Part shown: positions 25,991-57,980 of the stretch, piece by piece
Numbering within the stretch: position 1 is the stretch's first letter
How the letters are laid out: every line of letters starts with the position of its first letter
From: Scyliorhinus canicula
Lineage: Eukaryota
NCBI RefSeq assembly: GCF_902713615.1
Contig: NC_052153.1
Span: 142,181,772-142,245,771 of the forward strand
Reading direction: 5' to 3'
DNA: 64,000 nucleotides
Notes under the pieces: model-generated
The model's input: the letters and a program-made list of their open reading frames with translations, nothing else
Database searches by the model: none
What the model was told of the DNA's origin: nothing
Position numbers and translations under genes: made by a program

Positions 25991-26130
25991 AGTGATGTGG
26001 AGATGCCGGCGTTGGACTGGGGTGAGCACAGTAAGCAGTCTTACAACACCAGGTTAAAGTCCAACAGGTTTGTTTCAAACACAAGCTTTCGGTGCACAGC
26101 TCCTTCCTCAGGTGAATGGAGAGGTATCTA
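25991..26130 (-). mobile_element. Penelope-like terminal repeat with a hammerhead motif (26080-26114)
   Basis: Same sequence as the terminus of the GIY-YIG element at 42026. Minus strand reads CAC-CTGAGGA-A-GGAGC-TGT-GCACC-GAAA-GC-TT-GTG. Confidence 0.75.
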
Positions 26131-28965: not shown

Positions 28966-30164
28966 GTTAGTATTCCTTTTCAAAAATGGGAACCTGGCAC
29001 AATGGCTACTGAGAGGGAGTGAGCAGGTGATTAGTAATTTACATTTTCTGGCATGCAGCTCAAAGGCGTTGGAGCTGCTGTCCCAGTCATGGGGAGTGGC
29101 GAGGGTGGGGGGAGGGAGTTGGGACACCGGGGGGACTTCAGGGGGGTTGGGCTTGGTCAAGTGGCTGAAGCGTTCCAAGTCGGGGGGCACCCTTGGGTCA
29201 GGATGAGGGTCTTTGTGTCTGTGAGGTCTTCAAACCATCTTTAAATATTGTGGAGACCCAGAACAGGGGCAACCACAGCTGCAACTTGTCCATCCTACCA
29301 AACACTTCCAAGACAGACCCTGCTGCGGCTTCTATCCTGAAATTCACTTTCACTCCCTTTGACTATGACCAGCTTCGAGCTTCACCTTTGAAGGCTAATT
29401 CAAATGAAGAATTAGCCTTGTTAGTTGTGAGAGCACTTCACGCTCCTCAACTCTCAAGTGCCTCCTCAAGAGCACACGTGCCATGTCCCAGAGAATGATT
29501 AGTACACTGCATGTCCAGCAAACTTTGATGCCTGAACAGTGTGCCTGAGCTGTAGGAGTGTCAGCACCACAGAGGCAGCTGCCAACAATCAAACACTGAA
29601 TAGGACTTCACCACTTCTCAGAACCAAAGGGTAAGTGTGAGAATAAGGGGTGGGCAGCTGAGCATGGTCTCGCTAATGTTCCCGGCAGAGGTCTGGGGTA
29701 TAGAGGCTCCAGATGTGGCCAGGGATGAGTGTACAGAGCAAGGTTTGCTGACACAATTGGCTCGCTGGATGGCATTCTGAGAGAAAGCCGGACAGGTAAA
29801 GGTGGAGGAGGCTTGGAGAATTTGAGAGTCCTGGGGTGGAAGCCCTAACTCCTTGTCAGTCTCTCTCCTTCTCTAATTCCTTACAGATGCAATGTTGTTT
29901 GCTGGGATTGATCACGCAAAGGCTGCTCTTGCATTATGTGGCAGCCGAGGTGGGCATACCCTGGAGACGGCAGCAACGCCAACACTGGCTGGACGCAGCA
30001 CCACATGAGCTGGCGGTTGCTGCACATCATGAAGACCCGGCTACCCATTAGGTTGAGGAGGGACTCAGAAGGGGAGGCCAGGGACAGCCCGAGGTCTAGA
30101 GACGTTGTTACTTATTCAATGAACTGATGGACACCATGTTCTGCAGAAGACTGCGTGTCAGCAG

Positions 30165-30409
30165 TGTGGCGCTAACAATTATACTCAAAGCCGAGAGACT
30201 AGTACAATAGAGGCTTTATTGCTGTACGATGTTGTCCCTCCATCCGCAACTGTAGACTGAGGGTCTGAGCAGCTCTCATACATATTTATACACAAGCTCC
30301 CTGTGGGCGGAGCTAGCCGGCAGGGGCTGACCGGAGGAACCTGTATTACAGGTACAGGCATACATCCCCCTACTGCAGTACACATAACTACAGTGGTTAT
30401 CTCACCACA
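30165..30409 (-). repeat. 3' LTR of Gypsy element A
   Basis: Direct repeat of 34520-34764, preceded on the minus strand by a short purine-rich tract (TTTTTACAGTGGGTGAA). Confidence 0.97.
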
Positions 30410-30521
30410 TTCACCCACTGTAAAAATGAGTCCGGCGGGGGTGACATGTAACTCTAATACAAAGGATGCTATTTACAAGAGGGTCCAACAAGGAAATTCA
30501 AGAGTCCATCCGGTTAGCAGG

Positions 30522-33182
30522 TTACAGGTTGAGCCGAATCGGTGGTCGGACGTTCCGCTGTGAGCGGCGTAGCTGTGGTGGTGACGTCGGCACAGGCGGT
30601 GATGGCCCCGATGGTGCAGGTGCTGGCTGCTGGCGGGATGACTCAGAGAGCAAGCCGAAATCTTCCATGTCCTCCAGGGTGGGCAGGGGGATGAGGGATG
30701 GACCTGATGGGGACGAATAGGGGGGCGCTGGGGTTGGCGCAGGAAGGGGTGTGGGCATGGGATCGGCACCTGAGGGAGCCAGGTCCCGGAGCGAGACTGT
30801 GTCCTGGCGGCCGTCGGGGAACTCCACGTAGGCATACTGAGGGTTGGCGTGGAGAAGGCGTACTTTGTCCACCAGGGGTTCCGCCTTGTGGTGCCGTACA
30901 TGCCTACGGAGAAGGACTGGGCCCGGAGTCGTGAGCCAAGTCGGGAGCGACACTCCGGATGTGGACTTCCTAGGGAAGGCAAAAACGCGTTCATGGGGTG
31001 TACTGTTAGTTGCGGTGCACAGTAGCGACCGAATGGAATGGAGCGCGTCAGGGAGGACCTGCTGCCAGCGAGCGGCTGGGAGGTTCCTGGACCGTAGGGC
31101 CAGCTGGACGGCCCTCCATACCGTCCCGTTCTCCCTCTCTACCTGCCCGTTTCCCCGGGGGTTGTAGCTGGTCGTCCTGCTGGAGGCGATACCCCTGCTG
31201 AGCAGGAACTGACGCAGCTCATCGCTCATGAATGAAGATCCCCTGTCACTGTGGATATAGTCGGGGAAACCGAACAGGGCGAAAATGGAATCCAGGGCCT
31301 TGATGACGGTGGCAGACGTCATATCTGGGCATGGGATGGCAAAGGGGAACCTAGAAAATTCATCGACCACACTAAGGATGTAGGTGTTGCGGTCGGTAGA
31401 GGGAAGGGGCCCTTTGAAGTCCACGCTGAGGCGTTCAAAGGGGCGGGATGCTTTCACCAGGTGCGCGCGATCTGGCCGGTAGAAGTGCGGCTTGCACTCC
31501 GCACAGATCTGGCAGTCTCTGGTGACTGTCCGTACTTCCTCGATGGAGTAGGGCAGATTGCGGGCTTTGATCAGATGGTACAAGCGAGTGACCCCCGGAT
31601 GGCAAAGACTGTCGTGCAAGGCACGGAGCTGGTTCACTTGTGCACTGGCACATGTACCTCGGGAGAGGGCATCTGGGGGCTCGTTGAGCTTGCCGGGGCG
31701 ATACAAGATCTCGTAGTTAAAGGTGGAGAGCTCGATTCTCCACCGCAAGATTTTGTCATTCTTGATCTTGCCCCGCTGCGTGTTGTGGAACATGAAGGCT
31801 ACCGACCGTTGGTCAGTGAGGAGAGTGAATCTCCTGCCGGCCAGGTAATGCCTCCAGTGCCGCACCGCTTCAACGATTGCCTGGGCTTCCTTTTCGACAG
31901 AGGAATGCCGAATTTCGGAGGCGTGGAGGGTGCGTGAAAAGAATGCCACGGGTCTGCCGGCCTGATTCAGCGTGGCGGCAAGGGCGACATCTGAAGCGTC
32001 GCTCTCTACTTGGAAAGGCAGAGTCTCGTCTACGGCGTGCATCCCCGCCCTGGCTATGTCAGATCGAATGCAGGCGAAGGCCTGTTGTGCCTCGGCCGAG
32101 AGGGGAAAATGTGTGGACTGGATAAGTGGCCGGGCCTTGTCTGCGTATTGCGGGACCCACTGGGCGTAATAGGAGAAGAACCCAAGGCAGCGTTTGAGGG
32201 CCTTGGGGCAGTGGGGAATTGGGAGCTCCATGAGGGGGCGCATGCGGTCGGGATCGGGCCCCAGTAGTCCATTTTGGACTACGTAGCCAAGGATGGCTAA
32301 GCGGTCTGTGCGGAACACGCATTTCTCCTTGTTGTACGTGAGATTAAGGAGAGATGCGGTGTGGAGGAATTTATAAAGGTTGGCATCGTGGTCCTGCTGG
32401 TCATGGCCGCAGATGGTGACATTGTCGAGGTACGGGAAGGTGGCCTGCAATTCGTACCGGTCAACCATTCGGTCCATTTCTCGCTGAAAGACCGAGACCC
32501 CATTCGTGACGCCGAAGGGAACCCTCAGAAATTGGTACAGACGACCGTCCGCCTCAAAGGCAGTGTAGGGACGGTCCGATTTACGGATGGGGAGCTGGTG
32601 GTAGGCGGATTTCAGGTCAATAGTAGAGAAGACCCGGTACTGTGCAATCTGATTGACCATATCAGAAATGCGGGGGAGGGGGTACTTGTCGAGCTGCGTG
32701 TACCGGTTGATGGTCTGGCTGTAGTCCACGACCATCCTGTGCTTCTCCCCGGTCTTAACCACTACCACCTGGGCTCTCCAAGGGCTGTTGCTGGCCTCGA
32801 TGATACCCTCCCGAAGCAGCCGCTGGACTTCGGACCTGATGAAGGCCTTGTCCTGGGTGCTGTACCGTCTGCTCCTGGTGGCGACGGGCTTGCAATCCAC
32901 AGTCAGATTGGCAAAGAGGGAGGGGGGCTCAACCTTGAGGGTCGCGAGGCCGCAAACGGTGAGGGGAGGTAGGGGTCCACCGAATTTGAGGGTGAGGCTC
33001 TGGAGATTGCACTGGAAATCCAGGCCTAGTAGGAGTGAAGTGCAGAGGTCGGGGAGAATGTACAGACAGAAACGGACGAATTCCACACCCTGTACAGTGA
33101 GTTTAACCAGGCAGAAACCCCGGATCGGGACAGTGAGAACCGGAGGCAAGGGAGATCTGCCGGTCGGCGGGATGGATCGCAA
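30522..33182 (-). CDS. pol: Gypsy pol, open from the protease C-terminal half through RT, RNase H and integrase
   Basis: RT: SPWRAQVVVV, VVDY, IDLKSAYHQ, PFG, YLDN. RNase H: ESDAS, EKEAQA, TDQ, DALSR. Integrase: HDSLCH..CQIC zinc finger, DFKGP, SDRG, NGQVER. The ORF-track N-terminus is spurious; the real frame is entered near 33135. Confidence 0.93.
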   Translation of the reverse strand: MRSIPPTGRSPLPPVLTVPIRGFCLVKLTVQGVEFVRFCLYILPDLCTSLLLGLDFQCNLQSLTLKFGGPLPPLTVCGLATLKVEPPSLFANLTVDCKPVATRSRRYSTQDKAFIRSEVQRLLREGIIEASNSPWRAQVVVVKTGEKHRMVVDYSQTINRYTQLDKYPLPRISDMVNQIAQYRVFSTIDLKSAYHQLPIRKSDRPYTAFEADGRLYQFLRVPFGVTNGVSVFQREMDRMVDRYELQATFPYLDNVTICGHDQQDHDANLYKFLHTASLLNLTYNKEKCVFRTDRLAILGYVVQNGLLGPDPDRMRPLMELPIPHCPKALKRCLGFFSYYAQWVPQYADKARPLIQSTHFPLSAEAQQAFACIRSDIARAGMHAVDETLPFQVESDASDVALAATLNQAGRPVAFFSRTLHASEIRHSSVEKEAQAIVEAVRHWRHYLAGRRFTLLTDQRSVAFMFHNTQRGKIKNDKILRWRIELSTFNYEILYRPGKLNEPPDALSRGTCASAQVNQLRALHDSLCHPGVTRLYHLIKARNLPYSIEEVRTVTRDCQICAECKPHFYRPDRAHLVKASRPFERLSVDFKGPLPSTDRNTYILSVVDEFSRFPFAIPCPDMTSATVIKALDSIFALFGFPDYIHSDRGSSFMSDELRQFLLSRGIASSRTTSYNPRGNGQVERENGTVWRAVQLALRSRNLPAARWQQVLPDALHSIRSLLCTATNSTPHERVFAFPRKSTSGVSLPTWLTTPGPVLLRRHVRHHKAEPLVDKVRLLHANPQYAYVEFPDGRQDTVSLRDLAPSGADPMPTPLPAPTPAPPYSSPSGPSLIPLPTLEDMEDFGLLSESSRQQPAPAPSGPSPPVPTSPPQLRRSQRNVRPPIRLNL

Positions 33183-34490
33183 GGGAATAGCGCCTTACCG
33201 TGTCCGGGTGGACGAAGCTCTCGGTGCTCCCGGAGTCGATGAGGCAGGAGGTCACATGGCCGTTGACCAGCACCGATGTGGAAGAGGGTGCCAGGTTGCG
33301 AGGACGGGACTGGTCGAGCGTAACGGAGGCGAGCAGTAGTTGGTCGGCGGTTGAGTCAGATGAGTCCGACGAGGAGCGGTAGCGACCCGTGTCCCGTGAT
33401 GGCGGCCCCTGGAGACGAGATGGCGGCATCCGCAGTACCTGTGGGTAAAATGGCGGCGTCCATGGAGCGCACGTTATGGGGTCGGAACAAAATGGCGGCG
33501 CCCATGGAACGCACGTGGCTGTGGTGGATGAAGATGGCGGCGCCCATGGGGCGCACGTGGCGGGGGCGGCAAAAGATGGCGGCGCCCACTGATTGCACGT
33601 GGGGTCGGGGGAAGCGGACGGCGGGGCCCATTGAGGGAGCGGCTGAGGCGTGGGGACCGGCGGCGCGATAGCGGCGACCGTCCGGGACTGACACACCGCT
33701 GCAAAGTGGCCTTTCTTTCCACAAGCTTTGCAGGTCGCTGTGCGGGCCGGGCAGCGTTGGCGAGGGTGCTTCTGTTGGCCGCAGAAGTAACAGTGGGGAC
33801 CCCCAGGGGGTGCGGTGCGGCGGGCAGCGCAGGCATAGTGCGCGGGGGCGGCTGCTGGGGGGGCCGTTTGCGGGGTCCACGAGGGGTGGGACGGATGGGC
33901 CTGGGGAGCCGTTTGCGGGGTCCACGAGGGGTAGGACGGGTGGGCTGAGTGGCTAGCGGAGTAAGTGTGCGCACTACGGGAGGCGGCCGTCATGGAGAGC
34001 GCCAGGGCCTTTGCGGCCGCGAGGTCGGGGCGACCCCTTCCAGCAGTCGTTGCCGGATGGGGTCCGATGCAATGCCTGTAACGAAGGCATCGCGCATGAG
34101 TAAATCCGAATGTTCCGCGGCTGTGAGGGCCTGGCAGTCGCAGTCTCGTACCAGAGGTATAAGGGCCCTCCAGAAGTCCTCAATCGACTCACCCGGCTGC
34201 TGGACGCGAGTAGAAAGTTGATGCCTCGCAAACAGGGTGTTCGTCGATGGTGCATAATTCTCCTTGAGCAGTTCCATAGCTGCGGTGCAGTCGGTCGCAT
34301 CTCGAATGAGCGGAAAGACGCTGGAGCTAAGTCTGGAGTACAGGAGTTGCTTTTTCTGAGCCTCCGTCGGGGGAGGGTGTGCTGAAGAGATGTAGGCCTC
34401 GAAGACTGCGAGCCAGTGATCAAAGTCTTTTCTGGCGTGAGGCGAATGTGGATCCAGCTGCAGACGGTCAGGCTTGACTCTGATGTCCAT
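33103..34490 (-). pseudogene. gag: Gypsy gag and protease N-terminal half, broken by two small deletions
   Basis: ATG at 34490 in a GTCACCATGG context. Motifs RVQQPGESIEDF, MRDAFVTG, knuckles CYFCGQQKHPRQRC and CKACGKKGHFAAVC, protease LIDSGS. Frameshifts near 34028 (-1) and 33132 (-2). Confidence 0.9.
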
Positions 34491-34502
34491 GGTGACTGGG
34501 AA

Positions 34503-34518
34503 ATCGTACAGCAATAAA
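34503..34518 (-). other. Primer-binding-site position, complementary to the element's own LTR (putative self-priming PBS)
   Basis: Minus strand TTTATTGCTGTACGAT, 1 nt after the LTR, is the exact reverse complement of the minus-strand LTR segment at 34570-34585 (and 30215-30230). Confidence 0.8.
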
Positions 34519-34519
34519 T

Positions 34520-34764
34520 TGTGGCGCTAACAATTATACTCGAAGCCGAGAGACTAGTACAATAGAGGCTTTATTGCTGTACGATGTTGTCCCTCCATCC
34601 GCAACTGTAGACTGAGGGTCTGAGCAGCTCTCATACATATTTATACACAAGCTCCCTGTGGGCGGAGCTAGCCGGCAGGGGCTGACCGGAGGAACCTGTA
34701 TTACAGGTAGAGGCATACATCCCCCGACTGCAGTACACATAACTACAGTGGTTATCTCACCACA
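34520..34764 (-). repeat. 5' LTR of Gypsy element A (promoter)
   Basis: Minus strand shows a GC box (CTCCGCCC), TATAAAT, an Inr-like TCAGTC about 30 nt downstream, and AATAAA. Confidence 0.97.
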
Positions 34765-34957
34765 AGCAGGCAAACAGTGCAGCACCTGTGCTACATTCTT
34801 GGGAACTTGGCACCCTGTGGAGGAGCTGGACACCGACTCCCAGTGGCCGTGAAGGTCATTGCAACCTTGAACCTTTATGCCACTAGGTCATTCCAGGGCT
34901 CGAGTAGAAACCTGTGTGGCATATCACCGTCTTCCCCTACTTTCATCCAGGAGGTGA

Positions 34958-37474
34958 TGGATGCGTACCCTCTTCCCAGGATTGCAGACATGGTGAATCA
35001 GATCACCCAGTACCGCATTTTCTCCACGGTGGATCTGAAGTCTGCATACCACCAGCTCCCAATCCGCCCGGAGGACCGCCACTACACAGCGTTCGAGGCA
35101 GATGGCCGCCTCTTCCATTTCCTCCGGGTTCACTTTGGCGTCACGAATGGGGTCTTGGTGTTCCAACGAGCAATGGACCGAATGGTGAACCAGTACGGGC
35201 TGCGGGCCACGTTTCCGTACTTGGATAACGTCACCATCTGCGGCCATGATCAGCAGGACCACGACGCTAACCTCCATCGATTTCTCCAAACTGCCCAGAA
35301 ACTTAACCTCACGTATAACACGACCAGGCTAGCCATCCTCGGCAATGTCGTGGAAAATGGAGTCCTGGGCCCCGACCCGGACCGTATGCATCCCCTCTTA
35401 CAAATCCCTCTCCCTCATTGTCCCAGGGCCCTCAAAAGGTGCCTGGGATTCTTCTCGTATTATGCCCAGTGGGTCCCTCAGTATGCGGACAAAGCCCGCC
35501 CACTATTTAAGGCCACACTCTTTCCTCTGTCAGATGAGGCTCGCCAGGCCTTCGACTGCATCAATGAGGACATCACCAAAGCCACCATGCGGGTGGTGGA
35601 TGAATCCGTCCCTTTCCAGGTGGAGAGCGACGCCTCAGAGGTCGCTCTCGCAGCCACTCTAAATCAGGCAGGGAGTCCAGTCGCCTTTTTCTCCCGAACC
35701 CTCTCCGCTTCGGAACTTCGACACTCCTCAGTCGAAAAGGAAGCACAAGCCATTGTGGAAGCTATGCGACACTGGAGGCACTACCTCGCAGGTAGGAGGT
35801 TCACCCTCATCACTGACCAAAGATCGGTTGCCTTCATGTTTGACAACTCACAAAGGGGCAAAATAAAAAATGATAGAATCCTGCGGTGGAGGATCAAACT
35901 CTCCACCTACAAGTACGATATTATGTATCGACCGGGGAAGCTCAACGAGCCCCCAGATGCCCTGTCCCGCGGCACGTGCGCCAGCGTGCAAGACGACAGC
36001 CTGAAAGCTATCCACAATGACCTCTGCCACCCGGGGGTCACCCGGCTCGCCCATTACATCAAATCCCGAAATCTGCCTTTCTCCACCGAGGAGGTAAAAG
36101 CCATCACCAGGGATTGCCCGATCTGCGCGGAGTGCAAACCGCACTTCTATAGACCAGACAGGGCCCACCTGGTAAAGGCATTCGGGCCCTTTGAACGCCT
36201 GAGCATCGATTTCAAAGGGCCACTCAGAATGTGTACTTCCTGAACGTCATCGCCGAGTTCTCCCGCTTCCCCTTTGCTATCCCGTGCCCCGATATGACCT
36301 CCCACACAGTCATCAGAGCTCTGCACAGTTCTTCACCCTGTTTGGTTTCCCCAGCTACGTACACAGCGACAGGCATTCGTCCTTTATGAGCGACGAGCTG
36401 CGTTAGTACCTGCTCGACAAGGGCATCGCCTCGAGCAGGACTACCAGCTACAACCCCAGGGGGAACGAGCAGGTGGAGAGGGAGAACGCGACGGTCTGGA
36501 AGACCGTCCTACTGACCCCACGGTCCAGGAATCTCCCGACCTCCCATTGGCAGGAGGTCCTCGCCGCCGCGCTCCATGCTATTAGGTCCCTCCTATGCAC
36601 AGCCACCAACCAGACCCCTCACGAACGGCTATTTGTTTTTTCTAGGGGCACTACCACTGGGGTTTCGCTCCCAGCATGGTTGAAGACACCAGGCCCGGTT
36701 CTCCTCCGGAAGCACGTACGGGCACACAAAACTGACCCACTCGTAGAAAGAGTGCTCCTACTCCACTCCAACCCACAATACGCTTTCATTGAATATCCTG
36801 ATGGCTGTCAGGACACTGTTTCCCTCCGGGACCTGGCGCCTGTAGGATTCAACTCCACCACCACAGCCGCCGAGGTACCCCTCACACTACACCCCACACA
36901 ACCCTCCACGCCCTGTGCTCCCGCACCTACAGGTTCACGGCCCGTGCTCCGCGCCCCCGCGCCTATAGGTTTCCTGCGCTCCTCGCCGTCAAACCAGTCG
37001 GGTACGAAGCTCGGACCGAATCCCCCTCGGAGTCCACTATCGTACCCTCACCGACCGTCACCACCCAGCCACCCGAAGAGGCTGCAACCCCGGTGCTTCG
37101 CCGATCCCAAAGGACGACTCGGCCACCGAACCGGCTCAATTTGTAGACCCATCACCCCCGCCGGACTTGATTTTTTTACAGGGAGTGAATGTGGTGAATT
37201 ATAAACCTAGTAATTCACACTGTGTTCTTGTGGACTCTGTATACGAGCCGTTGCGCAGCTGTGCCCATAGGGGGAGATGAGGAGTTTGTACTGGGCTCCA
37301 CCCTTGGCTCCGCCCATGGCTCCGCCCATGGGTCCTCCCACTAACCGGAAGTATAAAGCTCTGCAGTCATGAGCCTTCTGCCAGTTCATCTCATCGCAGG
37401 CAGGCTCTGTTGTAAGATTGTTAAAATCACTGTTCACTTCCAACCACGTGTTTTGTGAATTGATGGTCTCATCA
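34958..37474 (+). mobile_element. pol: 5'-deleted Gypsy element B (RT-RH-IN and 3' LTR), same lineage as element A
   Basis: Begins at DAYPLPRIADMVNQI and carries YLDN. A 7-aa deletion lies at the end of RT; the integrase has frameshifts and a stop. Purine tract TTTTTTTACAGGGAGTGAA precedes the LTR. Confidence 0.93.
37190..37474 (+). repeat. 3' LTR of Gypsy element B (~285 bp)
   Basis: TGTGGTGAA...AATTGATGGTCTCATCA parallels the termini of LTR A. Tandem GGCTCCGCCC boxes and TATAAA are present. Confidence 0.8.
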
Positions 37475-38378
37475 CTTATAAATCAATGAAATTAATCTCA
37501 CAGAACTATTCAACTTCAGAAAGTTCGAACATTAATAGCAAGGAGTTTCACTCTCTTAATGTTCAGATTGTGTGCAACTACTGATTCTGAATAATGCACG
37601 TCTGTGCCCATTTCCCTGGGAGTGTGCACGACTGTTACATCCTGGGACACTCAGAGATCCCTGGTGCCATTGAGGATCATCCCAAGATGACGGGTTGGTT
37701 CATTGGGACAAGCGGTTATGACTGGGGTTATGACTGATGACGCTGGTGCGAAGGCCTGAGACCGAGGCAGAGACTCGATACAATGAGGTCCATGTTGCCA
37801 CCCGTGCTGTCCTTGAGTGGTGCATCAGGTTGCTGAAAATGCAGTTCCAATGCTTTGATCGCTCTGGCAGTGCCTTGCAGTACACCCCCCAGAGAGTCCC
37901 TGCTTTGTGGTGATCTGTTTTGCCTTTCACATTCTGGCACAGCAGCAGGATGACATGCTGGATGAAGAGGAGGAGCACGCGCACGTGGAGGGACATGCGG
38001 CCTCATCTGAGCAGGAGGAGGTGGTCCAAGAAGGACTGGAGGATGAGACAAGGAGGAGCCAGTGGATGGAGGACAGGTGGAGGACAGGTGGAGGCAAGAA
38101 TCTGATATGTGAGGGAGGCCCTCATCATGTCTAGATTCTGCTAGGAGGCTGTGTCCATCAGCTCAATGCACCCCCCCTCCCATTTTCCTCCCTACAATAT
38201 CCCCATTTCAATGCCTGCTTTCCCCCAGTCTCCCTCACCCCATTTTCCTCACTCCCCCATTCCTCCTCTTTGCCCTCTTCCCCCATTCCCTGCACTCTGC
38301 CCCATTCAGTTCCACCCCAATCACCCCCGTCCTCCCCCTTTTCCCTCTCTCCCCCCGTTCCCTCTTCCCCATGGTTAC

Positions 38379-42025: not shown

Positions 42026-44145
42026 TTCACAGAAAGAAGTCTTGTAACACCAGGTTAAAGTCCAACAGGTTTGTTTCAAACACTAGCTTTCAGAACACTG
42101 CTCCTTCCTCAGGTGAATGAAGACGTAGGTTCCAGAAAAATATATATAGACAAAGTCAAAGATGCAAGACGATATTTTGAATGCGAGCATTTGCAGGTAT
42201 TTAAGTATTTACAAATCCAGACAGAGGGGTAATCCCAGGTTAAAGAGGTGTGAAGTGCAGGATTTAAATCGTTTGAAGACAAATGTGAGGTAATACATTT
42301 TGGAAGGTCTAATACAGGTAGGGATTATACAGTGACTGGTAGAACCCTCAAGAGTATTGACAGTCAGAGAGATCTTGATGTACAAGTCCACAGGTCACTG
42401 AAAGGGGCAACACAGGTGGAGGAGATAGTCAAGAAGGCTTATGGCATGCTTGCATTCATTGGCCGGGGCATTGAGTATAAAAATTGGCAAACCATGTTGC
42501 AGCTGTATAGAACCTTAGTTATGCCAAACTTGGCGTATCGTGTTCAATTCTGGTCGCCACACTACCAGAAGGATGTGGAGGCTTTAGAGAGGGTGCAGAA
42601 GAGATTTACCAGGATGTTGCCTGGTATAGAGGACATTAGCTATGAGGAGAGGTTGAATAAACATGATTTGTTCTCACTGGAACGAAGGAGGGTGAGGGGC
42701 GACCTGATAGAGGTCTACAAAATTATGAGGGGCATAGACAGAGGGGATAGTCAGAGGCTTTTTCCCAAGGTAGAGGGGTCAATTACTAGGGGCACAGGTT
42801 TAAGGTGCGAGGGGCAAGGTTTCGAGGAGATGTACGAGGTACGTTTTTTTACACAGAGGGTAGTGGGTGCCTGGAACTCGCTGCCGGAGGAGGTGGTGGA
42901 AGCAGGGACGATAGTGACGTTGAAGGGGCATCTTGACAAATACATTAATAGGATGGGAATAGAGGAATACAGACCCCGCAAGTGCATAAGATTTTAGTTT
43001 AGACGGACAGCATGGTCGGCGCTGGCTTGGAGGGCCGAAGGACCTGTTCCTGTGCTGTACTTTTCTGTGTTCTTTGTTCTTGTTCTTTGTTGTCTCAAGA
43101 CAGAACAGTTGGTCGGATCTCGCAAGCCCAGGGTAGATGGTGATGGATGAATGTAATGCAAGATGAATCCAAGCTCCCGGTTGAGGCCGTACACGTGTGT
43201 GCGGAACTTGGCTATAAGTTTTTGCTCAGCGATTCTGCGTTGTTGCGCGTCCTGAAGGCCGCCTTGGAGAATGCTTACCCGAAGATCAGAGGGTGAATGC
43301 CCTTGACTGCTGAAGTGTTCCCCGACTGGAAGGGAACATTCTTGCCTGGCGATTGTCGTACGATGTCCGTTCATCCGTTGTCACAGGGTCTGCATGTTCT
43401 CGCCAATGTACCACGCTTCGGGACATCATTTCCTGCAGCGTATGAGGGCGACAACATTGGCCGAGTCACACGAGTATGTACCGCACACCTGGTGGGTGGT
43501 GTTCTCACGTGTAATGGGTGGTACCCAGGTCGATGATCTGGCATGTCTTGCAGAGATTGCCATGGTAGGATTGTGTGGTGTCGTGGTCGCTGTTCTGAAG
43601 GCTGGGTAGTTTGCTGCAAACAATCGTTTGTTTGAGATTGTGCTGTTGTTTTAAGGCAAGTAGTGGGGGGGTGTGGGAATGACCGTGGCAATATGTTCGT
43701 CTTCATCGAAGACGTGTTGAAGGCTGCGAAGAAGATGTCGTAGTTTCTCTGCTCCGGGGGAGTATTGGATGACGAAGGGTACTCTGTCGGTTGTGTCCCG
43801 TGTTTGTCTTCTGAGGAGGTCGGTGTGGTTTTTTGCTGTGGCGTGTTGGAACTGTTGATCCCGTTCGTACATAGATGTCTATTACGCTCCTCCTCGTCTG
43901 AGCAGATGCTGTGTATATGGAGAGCTTGTTCATAGGGGATGGCTTCTTTAATGTGATTAGGGTGGAAGCTGGAGAAGTTGAGCATCGTGAGGTTATCCGT
44001 GGGCTTGCGGTAAAGCGAAGTGCTGAGGTGACCATCCTTGATTGAGATGAGTGTGTCCAAGGATGCAACCGATTTTGGAGAGTAGTCCATGGTGAGTCTG
44101 ATGGTGGGCTGGAACCTATTGATGTCATCGTGTCATCGTTTCAGT
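42026..44145 (-). mobile_element. Penelope-like retroelement, 5'-truncated (RT C-terminus, GIY-YIG endonuclease, terminal repeat), interrupted by CR1
   Basis: LDTLISIKDGHLSTSLYRKPTD...FSSFHP (RT C-terminus); CDSANVVALIRC...WYIGE...RMNGH...PVGEHFSSQGH...EQKLIAKFRT..GLN (GIY-YIG). Hammerhead motif at 42081-42115. Confidence 0.9.
42256..43090 (+). mobile_element. CR1 LINE 3' portion inserted into the Penelope element
   Basis: 221-aa ORF at 42332-42997 (QRDLDVQVH...LERVQKRFTRMLPG...FFTQRVVGAWNSLP) and TTCTTTG tail. Confidence 0.93.
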
Positions 44146-56271: not shown

Positions 56272-57980
56272 GGGCGGGATTCTCCGTCAGCTGACGTCGG
56301 ATTTGGGAGAAACGGTTGGGCGGAGAATCAGTCCTGATGCCAAAATCGCGGCAGGCGCCGATTTGATGCCAAATCGCAATTCACCGTTGCCTTGACAGCG
56401 GCGCCAATGCGGCTCACAACACACGTCCGTAAACAATGTTTGCATATCATTAGTGGACCTGACCCAGTATTCTTTGGGACCGCAGCGAATTTCCGCTTCC
56501 GATGGACTGAGTTCCTGATGGCGCAGTCTACCTTTTGTTTTAAAAAATTGGGCAATCGGTATCGTGGTTGATGAGGGAGACAGAGAGGAGGTAGGACCCA
56601 GAAAAGCGCAACGGTGGGCTGTCAGGCTGGACGCTGGCCCGACTGGCTGGGGTGGGAGGGGCACGGCAGGGTTGGCTTGGGGAGTGACAGGGGTACAGGT
56701 CGAGTGGCCGGGGTGCCCCCTCCATGGGACTAGGGCGGTGTCCACGCACGGTCCGGCATTGCCACGGCCTGCAAGCCAGCCATCTTGCGCGCAACTCACT
56801 GACTGCCTACCTTGACCCGAGGTTCTACAGAGTGACACCGGCTGAATAGGTGCTCCACCCCCACCTCCTCCCCGCCATACCACCCCCACACAGTCACCAC
56901 CTGCCAGTGGGGCATCAGGCTGCCCACTGAAGGGTAATGCCGACTGTAGCCTTTAATGCGACGCTGGCCAGGGGCCACAGAGTGCACTGCTGGCAAGGGG
57001 AGAGCCAACGACAGTACCCCTAGCATCAGGAACTGGTGTGAGGGCCACAGGCCCCCAGGGTGCTGGGCAATGATGGGGCCATGGGTGCGGAGATGGGGGA
57101 GGCATGTGGAGGCAGAGCCCGAACAGCCAACCTGGGCCACCATGCAGCCCGGTAGACCTGGTTGGGCACGGGGGCATGAACCATGCTAACATTTTCACCC
57201 CCTGCAGATACTGGATATTGGAATTCAATTAGCAATGGTGCCCTTGCCTTTAGTTGCCGCAGCCTTGGGGATGCCTTGCGACTGTGCAAGCTGACGCTGC
57301 TCAAGGTGGAGGGAGCTGCAGCAGCAGAGCATGCACCAGTGGTTTTTGGAGTGTGATTCAACATGGGGGGGGTAGATTCTCCATTGCGGGATGCCCGAAG
57401 TGCGTTTCCCTCATTAGATAGGGTCTCCGCCTCAGTCTCCAGCCTCCACACTGGCGTAATCAGCCATGTCCTCAGCGGGTACTCCTTATCCTCAAGAGCT
57501 AACCCACCATCCTGGGGGGTCCTCGAAGACACCGGGAATCTCCGCGTCTCCCAGGATGTAGCTGTCAGGCACTCCCTGGAAAACGTGCACACACGTGCAC
57601 GATCCTGAGATGGTGGTTGCACATGAGTTGAACATTCAGGCAGTGGAACCCCTTCCTGTTAATTAAGGGCACTCCTGATTGCCCCGGAGAGTGGAAGGCA
57701 ACATGCATGCCATCTATTACCCACTGGACCTCAGGCATCCTAGTGATGGCGGCGAATCCTGCTGCCCAGACATCTTGATGGGCTTGATACAGCACAAAGT
57801 TTATATAGTCAGCAGCCCTGTCATCCTGACCTCACGGATGTACTTGTCGGCTGTAGCTTCTGTTATGCCACTCGAGCCCTGGAACAATCAGGTGGTATAA
57901 AGGGTCAGGGCTGCGGCGACCTTCATGTTCACCAGGAGTGGGTGTTTTCCTCCTCCAAGGGATGCCAAGTCTGCAAGAAC
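56272..57980. mobile_element. Rearranged Harbinger remnant with a transposase fragment on the minus strand (57400-57975)
   Basis: TIR GGGCGGGATTCTCC at 56272. Peptide GFAAITRMPEVQWVIDGMHV...NRKGFHCLNVQLMCNH...VCARFPGS. Confidence 0.8.

What the first reader, a model, noticed from the sequence alone, without database searches (positions are those of the whole stretch)
32421..35229. Non-canonical RT active site YLDN conserved in two divergent Gypsy families
Seen: element A encodes FPYLDNVTICG as TAC CTC GAC AAT (32432-32421), and element B encodes it as TAC TTG GAT AAC (35218-35229). Three of the four codons differ synonymously while Asn is kept, and the LTR interiors are dissimilar, so YLDN is a selected lineage trait rather than decay. 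Element A transposed recently (LTRs 242/245 identical). Established: YxDD is nearly invariant in RTs. Changing the second Asp to Asn cripples HIV-1 RT, and in Ty1 it leaves polymerisation but blocks transposition. Inference: this lineage has compensating changes, possibly linked to its unusual priming.
Basis: partly seen in the sequence, partly recalled or inferred. Interest (0 to 1): 0.75.

Follow-up and report, generated by a model that had tools for sequence, protein, structure and literature searches.

The report
Gypsy retrotransposons with YLDN reverse transcriptase
Two retrotransposon copies in this cartilaginous-fish window have asparagine where reverse transcriptases normally keep their second catalytic aspartate; this is the inherited state of a large animal-wide Gypsy clade that has switched between Asp and Asn many times, so the enzyme evidently does not need that carboxylate.

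Summary
Element A reads TAC CTC GAC AAT (32432-32421, minus strand) and element B reads TAC TTG GAT AAC (35218-35229). Both give YLDN, aligned on YLDD of Ty3 RT. A's LTRs match at 242 of 245 positions.

- **Not decay:** A and B differ at 26% of nucleotides, yet dN/dS is 0.07.
- **Shared trait:** all 15 shark and ray relatives and 7 of 7 named cnidarian relatives read YxDN. High-copy coral and ray families are uniformly N and include full-length ORFs.
- **Not a single compensated switch:** among 223 relatives there are 108 N and 115 D, with at least 13 D/N changes. An AU test rejects a single origin (p = 2e-5). Named arthropod members are all D.
- **Both states recently mobile:** D and N elements both have identical or near-identical LTRs.
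- **No compensating residue found:** no other RT-RNase H column tracks D/N.
- **No link to priming:** the self-complementary primer-binding site is present in 7 of 7 D and 4 of 4 N elements.

A and B are themselves damaged copies.

Precedents are the natural YVDN of nematode BEL/Pao elements, and Ty3 D214N and Ty1 D211N, which polymerise in vitro but do not transpose.

The scan had already found this on other DNA of the same genome (s1-240131, same conclusion).

The parts
34520..34764 (-). Element A 5' LTR (245 bp, TG..CA ends, TATA-like box and AATAAA)
30165..30409 (-). Element A 3' LTR; 242 of 245 positions identical to the 5' LTR (mismatches at 30187, 30355, 30371)
34765..34769 (.). 5-bp target-site duplication of A (AGCAG on the + strand); the other copy is at 30160-30164
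30160..30164 (.). Second copy of A's target-site duplication
34503..34518 (-). Primer-binding-site position of A. It is a 16-nt exact complement of LTR segment 34570-34585, which ends in AATAAA
   Evidence: 0 of 2000 shuffles reach 16 nt
33993..34490 (-). A gag, N-terminal part (frame -3), with a weak Retrotrans_gag match. The frame is lost near 33993-34023
33106..33993 (-). A gag C-terminal part with two CCHC knuckles, plus the N-terminal half of the protease (D-S-G, about 33136-33276), in frame -2. The frame changes again near 33134-33142, inside the protease
30522..33182 (-). A pol ORF (886 aa): protease C-terminal half, RT, RNase H and integrase. Integrase D, D, E residues are present
32280..32756 (-). 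A reverse transcriptase domain (Pfam RVT_1, residues 143-301)
32421..32432 (-). A RT motif C: TAC CTC GAC AAT = YLDN
31719..32027 (-). A RNase H domain
31158..31448 (-). A integrase core
34957..36225 (+). Element B: 5'-truncated RT (starting at the equivalent of A pol residue 164), RNase H and integrase zinc domain, frame 1. It lacks 7 residues at the primer-grip motif
35218..35229 (+). B RT motif C: TAC TTG GAT AAC = YLDN
36225..37143 (+). B integrase remainder, broken (frames 3 then 2, with a stop)
37190..37475 (+). B 3' LTR. The start is well defined (TGTGGTGAAT after a polypurine tract). The end is approximate and lies before an unrelated repeat that begins at 37531

Best explanation
A and B are two slightly to heavily decayed copies of Ty3/Gypsy-type LTR retrotransposons. 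They belong to a compact, single-ORF clade spread across animals, whose members NCBI labels 'K02A2.6-like'. In this clade the second residue of the catalytic D-D pair in RT motif C can be either Asp or Asn. The motif A Asp and the first motif C Asp are invariant and presumably hold the two metal ions (inferred from Ty3 mutagenesis). The second position tolerates only D or N, which suggests a polar supporting role that does not need a charge (inferred). Both forms transpose. N is the fixed state in the shark/ray and cnidarian branches. D is the state in the named arthropod members. The state has switched repeatedly in both directions. YLDN in this window is therefore inherited from active parents. 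It was not acquired by decay and it is not tied to the clade's self-complementary primer-binding site.
For: **Sequence and homology.** The codons are as stated. The domain order is PR-RT-RH-IN. Ty3 RT is the closest solved relative by sequence. The AlphaFold model (pLDDT 86) puts YLDN on the hairpin between two strands, and its best full-length PDB superposition is Ty3 RT at TM 0.64 (Foldseek E-value about equal to cauliflower mosaic virus RT, 8r0s_A).

**Selection.** dN/dS between A and B is 0.071 over 423 codons with saturated dS. One D/N sister pair gives dN/dS 0.097; the other is saturated at synonymous sites (pN/pS about 0.14). In a 64-sequence alignment the motif A Asp, Tyr152 and Asp154 are invariant while position 155 varies.

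**Distribution.** The first search gave 96 N and 25 D. The second, from an insect member, gave about 90 D and 12 N. Sharks and rays are 12 of 12 N, cnidarians 7 of 7 N, arthropods 20 of 20 D.

**Repeated switching.** At least 10 changes on 122 rows, 7 of them forced by starred branches. At least 13 changes on 225 rows. Reversals N to D are needed at every rooting. Holding the D rows together costs 865 lnL, p-AU 2.5e-5. The site has 11 parsimony changes against a column median of 12, but shows only D and N, apart from one K in a copy that reads YLNK.

**Both states active.** Six families at 90% identity are uniform at this site. Eighteen N and 8 D copies are at least 1100 aa long. LTRs are 100% identical in D elements L004, L006, L007, L009 and L011, and 98.7-100% in N elements L002, L005, L010 and A.

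**Biochemical plausibility.** Ty3 D214N and D214E keep polymerase activity, whereas D151N and D213N do not (PMC5371799). Ty1 D211N polymerises (PMC2148107). Nematode BEL/Pao elements carry YVDN naturally (PMC554778, PMC9094657).
Against: - No enzyme was assayed, so activity of a YLDN RT is inferred from selection and from young copies.
- In Ty3 and Ty1 the same substitution abolishes transposition. Something in this clade must therefore differ, and it was not identified.
- The trees are quick IQ-TREE and FastTree runs without an outgroup, so the ancestral state and the direction of changes rest on parsimony.
- Most rows come from metagenome or run assemblies with unknown hosts, and single rows may be dead copies.
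- The N:D ratios are biased by the choice of query.
- The AU test was run on a 52-row subset under LG+G4.
- A and B themselves are defective.
Confidence: 0.8

Rival explanations
1. Asn is specifically adaptive in this lineage. It is made workable by compensating substitutions and is functionally coupled to self-priming.
For: N is fixed across all 15 shark/ray rows and within the coral families. Ty1 D211N is partly rescued by RNase H suppressors (PMC2148107). The whole D/N-tolerant clade carries the unusual PBS, so a clade-level link, which would be a single evolutionary event, cannot be excluded.
Against: There are at least 13 D/N switches, including reversals to D. Sister D and N elements share the same motif context. 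No column co-varies with the state; the best candidate is A pol residue 319, median p 0.25. The PBS is identical in kind in 7 D and 4 N elements from both halves of the tree.
Confidence: 0.12
2. YLDN enzymes are dead, and the elements are copied in trans by YxDD relatives.
For: D-to-N mutants of Ty3 and Ty1 do not transpose (PMC5371799, PMC2148107). A and B are themselves defective copies.
Against: The RT domain is under strong purifying selection (dN/dS 0.074). All other catalytic residues are invariant. No D-state member was found among the shark and ray hits. N families hold many full-length ORFs.
Confidence: 0.05
3. Asn arose in these two copies after insertion, for example by CpG deamination of GAC-GAY.
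For: D-to-N is a single G-to-A transition. In A it follows GAC, so the ancestral site could have been a CpG.
Against: B has GAT-AAC. The closest relatives in other species all have N. CpG observed/expected does not separate N from D elements; A has 0.85.
Confidence: 0.02

Closest known systems
Ty3 of Saccharomyces cerevisiae (Metaviridae), RT structure 4OL8
   Same: It is the closest solved relative by sequence (E=3.4e-46), and its chain 4ol8_B gives the best full-length superposition (TM 0.64), with a Foldseek E-value about equal to cauliflower mosaic virus RT (8r0s_A). It shares the PR-RT-RH-IN order, and its motif C aligns residue for residue. Engineered D214N keeps polymerase activity with lower processivity (PMC5371799).
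   Different: Ty3 is YLDD, and D214N is lethal for its transposition. Here N is the natural state of multiplying families. Ty3 uses a tRNA primer (established knowledge). These elements have a PBS complementary to their own LTR.
Nematode BEL/Pao elements Cer7-Cer13 and Atlas virus (Belpaoviridae) with YVDN
   Same: They carry the same natural D-to-N replacement at the second Asp of motif C in an LTR retroelement lineage (PMC554778 citing Bowen and McDonald 1999; PMC9094657).
   Different: They belong to a different superfamily. The window elements match Gypsy-type Pfam domains, and Ty3 is their nearest solved structure. This is therefore an independent occurrence. Repeated D/N switching has not been described for BEL/Pao in the papers read.
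Ty1 D211N mutant (Pseudoviridae)
   Same: The second Asp of YXDD is replaced by Asn. The enzyme still polymerises, with kpol down 223-fold and a preference for Mn2+ (PMC2148107).
   Different: It is a laboratory mutant that cannot transpose unless RNase H suppressors arise. No matching co-variation was seen here.
Tf1/sushi self-priming retrotransposons
   Same: The PBS is complementary to the element's own upstream RNA rather than to a tRNA (established knowledge; not checked in a paper here).
   Different: No chromodomain was detected in A's integrase. The complementary segment lies 24-60 nt before the LTR end, mostly at an AATAAA-like signal. Whether it is the 5' end of the transcript is unknown. 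These elements are YxDD.
Mononegavirales L polymerase GDNQ motif
   Same: It is a natural Asp-Asn pair at the motif C turn of a palm-domain polymerase (from my own knowledge, not tested).
   Different: It is an RNA-dependent RNA polymerase and is only a distant structural analogue.

Membership tests
Ty3/Gypsy (Metaviridae) LTR retrotransposon | Direct LTRs with TG..CA ends and a short target-site duplication | tested here: met
   A has 245-bp LTRs with TGTGG...CCACA ends and a 5-bp duplication.
Ty3/Gypsy (Metaviridae) LTR retrotransposon | pol domain order protease - RT - RNase H - integrase | tested here: met
   Pfam domains in order: Asp_protease_2, RVT_1, RT_RNaseH, Integrase_H2C2, rve.
Ty3/Gypsy (Metaviridae) LTR retrotransposon | RT closest to Ty3-type RTs | tested here: met
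   4ol8_A at E=3.4e-46. Foldseek match to 4ol8_B at TM 0.64.
Ty3/Gypsy (Metaviridae) LTR retrotransposon | Gag with CCHC zinc knuckle | tested here: met
   Two C-X2-C-X4-H-X4-C motifs can be read in the frame -2 segment. The Pfam zf-CCHC match is weak.
Ty3/Gypsy (Metaviridae) LTR retrotransposon | Canonical YxDD in RT motif C (typical of the family, not definitional) | tested here: not met
   YLDN in both A and B.
BEL/Pao (Belpaoviridae) YVDN elements | BEL/Pao-type protease and RT | tested here: not met
   Only Gypsy-type Pfam families matched, and Ty3 is the nearest solved structure.
Tf1/sushi self-priming chromoviruses | Integrase C-terminal chromodomain | tested here: not met
   No Chromo family among the Pfam matches of A pol at E<=0.01.
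Tf1/sushi self-priming chromoviruses | PBS complementary to the first bases of the element's own transcript | tested here: inconclusive
   11-16 nt of exact complementarity to an LTR segment in 11 elements. The transcription start is unknown.
Mag lineage of Ty3/Gypsy (Mag, SURL, Jule) | RT groups with the reference Mag, SURL and Jule sequences | not tested
The resemblance (about 4-4.6 kb, short LTRs, single gag-pol ORF, wide spread in animals) is from memory only.

The most novel reading that the evidence does not exclude
This is a Metaviridae clade in which the second catalytic carboxylate of RT is dispensable for transposition in vivo, and the D/N choice is a tunable setting. Asn is fixed in cnidarian and elasmobranch hosts and Asp in arthropod hosts. 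The setting may trade metal-ion preference, speed or processivity against host conditions. It may be possible only because the clade primes on its own RNA.
Probability: 0.25. Interest if true: 0.7.

Novelty: new variant of a known kind. Interest (0 to 1): 0.55.

Why it matters
YxDD is taught as near-invariant in reverse transcriptases. In the two best-studied LTR retrotransposons (Ty1 and Ty3) the D-to-N change leaves polymerisation but abolishes transposition. This clade provides many natural, closely related pairs of multiplying elements that differ at exactly this residue. They allow a direct test of what the second aspartate does (metal choice, pyrophosphate release, processivity) without engineering. 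There is also a practical point. Annotation pipelines and TE classifiers that require YxDD would wrongly call these abundant elements inactive. No paper in the searchable library mentions YLDN or YxDN for Gypsy elements.

Tried and rejected
**CpG-deamination pressure as the driver of N.** CpG observed/expected overlaps fully between N elements (0.47-0.85) and D elements (0.52-0.95).

**Compensating residues.** Twelve column/residue combinations differ by at least 0.45 in frequency between N and D rows. None tracks the state in phylogenetically independent pairs. Only 7 pairs were available, so power is low.

**Outgroups.** No other Gypsy-type RT is present in the window or in the fetched loci. 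A scan of viral contigs found no relative. The trees are therefore unrooted.

**Naming the clade.**
- Bowen and McDonald 1999 could not be opened.
- Supplements of two LTR-retrotransposon surveys hold no such motif strings.
- A literature search on the Mag family did not help.
- Whether this is the Mag lineage stays open.

**AU test on all 121 rows.** It did not finish in four runs. It was replaced by a 52-row subset under LG+G4.

**Large representative-protein search.** It was not run. The operators flagged its cost. The clade is so populous at about 60% identity that its best 150 hits would probably not have reached outgroups.

**P0009 (Trichuris).** It looks like a gene model built from two element copies and was left out of the AU subset.
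Full report
**1. Observation**

The codons are exactly as reported.
- On the minus strand, 32432-32421 reads TAC CTC GAC AAT.
- On the plus strand, 35218-35229 reads TAC TTG GAT AAC.
- Both lie in the peptide FPYLDNVTICGHDQQDHDA.
- The Leu, Asp and Asn codons differ synonymously.

phmmer against solved structures aligns YLDN on YLDD of Ty3 reverse transcriptase (4ol8_A, E=3.4e-46). An AlphaFold model of the RT-RNase H region (pLDDT 86) places the four residues on the hairpin between two strands, as expected for motif C. Its best full-length PDB superposition is Ty3 RT at TM 0.64 (Foldseek E-value about equal to cauliflower mosaic virus RT, 8r0s_A).

**2. Anatomy of element A (30165-34764, minus strand)**

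- It has 245-bp LTRs with TG..CA ends that differ at 3 positions.
- It has a 5-bp target duplication.
- One base after the 5' LTR lies a 16-nt stretch that is the exact complement of an LTR segment ending in AATAAA.
- The coding region holds gag with two CCHC knuckles, a D-S-G protease, RT, RNase H and integrase.
- Relatives encode all of this in one ORF of about 1100-1450 aa. A runs in frame -3, then -2, then -3. The frame is lost near 33993-34023 and again near 33134-33142, inside the protease.
- A is therefore a young but already damaged copy.

**3. Anatomy of element B**

- It starts within RT at 34957 and changes frame twice.
- It has a stop in the integrase part.
- It lacks 7 residues at the K-C-x-F primer-grip motif.
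- It ends in a 3' LTR that starts at 37190.

**4. Relation between A and B**

A and B are 73.9% identical in DNA and 79% in protein. In the tree they are neighbours inside one shark/ray subclade. They are related families, not distant ones.

**5. Decay or selection?**

- dN/dS between A and B (Nei-Gojobori method) is 0.071 over 423 codons. It is 0.074 for the RT part. Synonymous sites are saturated.
- The two lineages therefore diverged while RT function was under strong selection.
- The word search returned 120 homologues at 58-85% identity over RT-RNase H. They come from sharks and rays (Scyliorhinus, Hypanus, Narcine, Mobula), cnidarians, an insect, a nematode and many metagenome assemblies.
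- Of these, 96 read YxDN and 25 read YxDD.
- In six families clustered at 90% identity the state is uniform:
  - N in Acropora/Montipora (6 of 6), Pocillopora (12 of 12), Porites (10 of 10) and Hypanus (9 of 9).
  - D in two other families (9 of 9 and 10 of 10).
- Full-length copies of at least 1100 aa exist in both states.
- YLDN was therefore inherited from active parents.

**6. Is N a single compensated innovation?**

No. The evidence is as follows.
- On a 122-row tree built without the motif column, the state changes at least 10 times. Seven of these changes are forced by well-supported branches.
- A second search from the insect member P0111 added 103 mostly arthropod sequences, about 90 D and 12 N.
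- The combined 225-row tree has two well-supported halves. One is arthropod-rich and mostly D. The other is a cnidarian/elasmobranch half that is mostly N with scattered D. It needs at least 13 changes.
- With an Asp root, as in all other RTs, reversals from N to D are needed at every possible rooting. At least 6 are needed at the most parsimonious rootings.
- If reversals were forbidden, 19 separate gains of N would be needed on the first tree.
- Holding the D rows together is rejected: delta lnL 865, p-AU 2.5e-5, on a 52-row subset.
- The site changes about as often as a median column (11 against 12 parsimony steps) but uses only D and N. The neighbouring Tyr and Gly never change, and the first Asp changes only in one decayed copy.
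- Named hosts split cleanly: sharks and rays 12 of 12 N, cnidarians 7 of 7 N, arthropods 20 of 20 D.

**7. Do both forms move?**

- D-state elements L004, L006, L007, L009 and L011 have 100% identical LTRs.
- N-state elements L002, L005, L010 and A have 98.7-100% identical LTRs.
- D/N sister pairs are 81-83% identical in protein. One pair gives dN/dS 0.097; the other is saturated at synonymous sites (pN/pS about 0.14).

**8. Compensation and priming**

- No RT-RNase H column follows the D/N state in phylogenetically independent pairs. The best candidate is A pol residue 319, median p 0.25, from 7 pairs. Power is low.
- The self-complementary PBS is present in 7 of 7 D and 4 of 4 N elements from both halves of the tree. 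It is 11-16 nt long, begins just after the LTR end (within 0-2 nt wherever the exact end could be fixed), and is complementary to a segment 24-60 nt upstream that mostly ends in an AATAAA-like signal. At most 1 of 2000 shuffles matches each.
- The PBS is therefore a trait of the whole clade and does not co-vary with YLDN.
- A clade-level link (tolerance of N only where self-priming exists) would be a single event. It cannot be tested with these data.

**9. Mechanism**

- Shown: the motif A Asp and the first motif C Asp are invariant, while the second position is D or N only.
- From the literature on Ty3: D151N and D213N abolish polymerase activity. D214N and D214E retain it with reduced processivity. 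D214 was proposed to stabilise the activated complex rather than bind the metal. All of these mutants were lethal for transposition (PMC5371799).
- From the literature on Ty1: D211N polymerises with kpol down 223-fold and prefers Mn2+. It transposes only with RNase H suppressors (PMC2148107).
- Inferred: in this clade the second position needs a hydrogen-bonding side chain of that size, not a charge. Some clade-wide feature makes the loss of charge compatible with full replication. That feature was not identified.

**10. Comparison and novelty**

- Natural YVDN is documented for nematode BEL/Pao elements, another superfamily (PMC554778, PMC9094657).
- I found no paper in the searchable library that reports YxDN in Gypsy elements.
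- The elements meet the Ty3/Gypsy criteria. They do not meet those of BEL/Pao or of the Tf1/sushi chromoviruses.
- Whether they are the Mag lineage was not tested.
- The scan had noted YLDN Gypsy copies in several other windows of this genome. One follow-up (s1-240131) reached the same conclusion, which I reproduced independently here.

**11. Limits**

- No enzyme data were obtained.
- The trees are quick or FastTree runs without an outgroup.
- Many rows come from unknown hosts.
- The N:D proportions depend on the queries used.

Noticed in passing
window 34503-34518 and 34570-34585; L001, L002 and L004-L011 upstream of gag: Every element of the clade that was examined (11, in both D and N states, with hosts from damselfly and butterfly to this cartilaginous fish) has a PBS-position sequence exactly complementary (11-16 nt) to a segment of its own LTR. 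In all but one (L006) that segment ends in an AATAAA, ATTAAA, GATAAAA or AGTAAA-type signal. This looks like a clade-wide self-priming design. It is the subject of another note (s1-233954).
   Followed up: partly
window 26027-26126 and 42028-42127: Two copies of a 100-nt repeat, 89% identical and 16,001 bp apart, on the same strand. It is probably an interspersed SINE-like repeat.
   Followed up: no
window 33990-33993 (minus strand): At A's first frame break the stop of the upstream gag ORF and the ATG of the next ORF overlap as ATGA. Relatives read straight through in one frame, so this is most likely an accident of an indel.
   Followed up: partly
L003:1-7628: The contig carrying P0002, A's close relative, holds two copies of the element head to tail with a 3757-nt period (98.5% identical). 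This is a tandem arrangement rather than two separate insertions.
   Followed up: no
P0011, P0033; bioRxiv 10.1101/2025.02.19.638963: Members of this retrotransposon clade are deposited as bacterial proteins ('Rhizobiales bacterium', 'DDE-type integrase') in metagenome bins. A Greenland shark genome preprint treats 'K02A2.6-like' genes as a host gene family linked to olfaction. Both look like retrotransposon pol genes misread as cellular genes.
   Followed up: no
window 37531-37788 and 57409-57663: Just after B's LTR an unrelated repeat begins. It recurs inverted at 57409-57663 (71% identity over 258 nt).
   Followed up: no
P0009 (Trichuris suis): The RT-RNase H query matches this 1551-aa protein twice (residues 367-626 and 855-1174). 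The gene model probably fuses two element copies.
   Followed up: no
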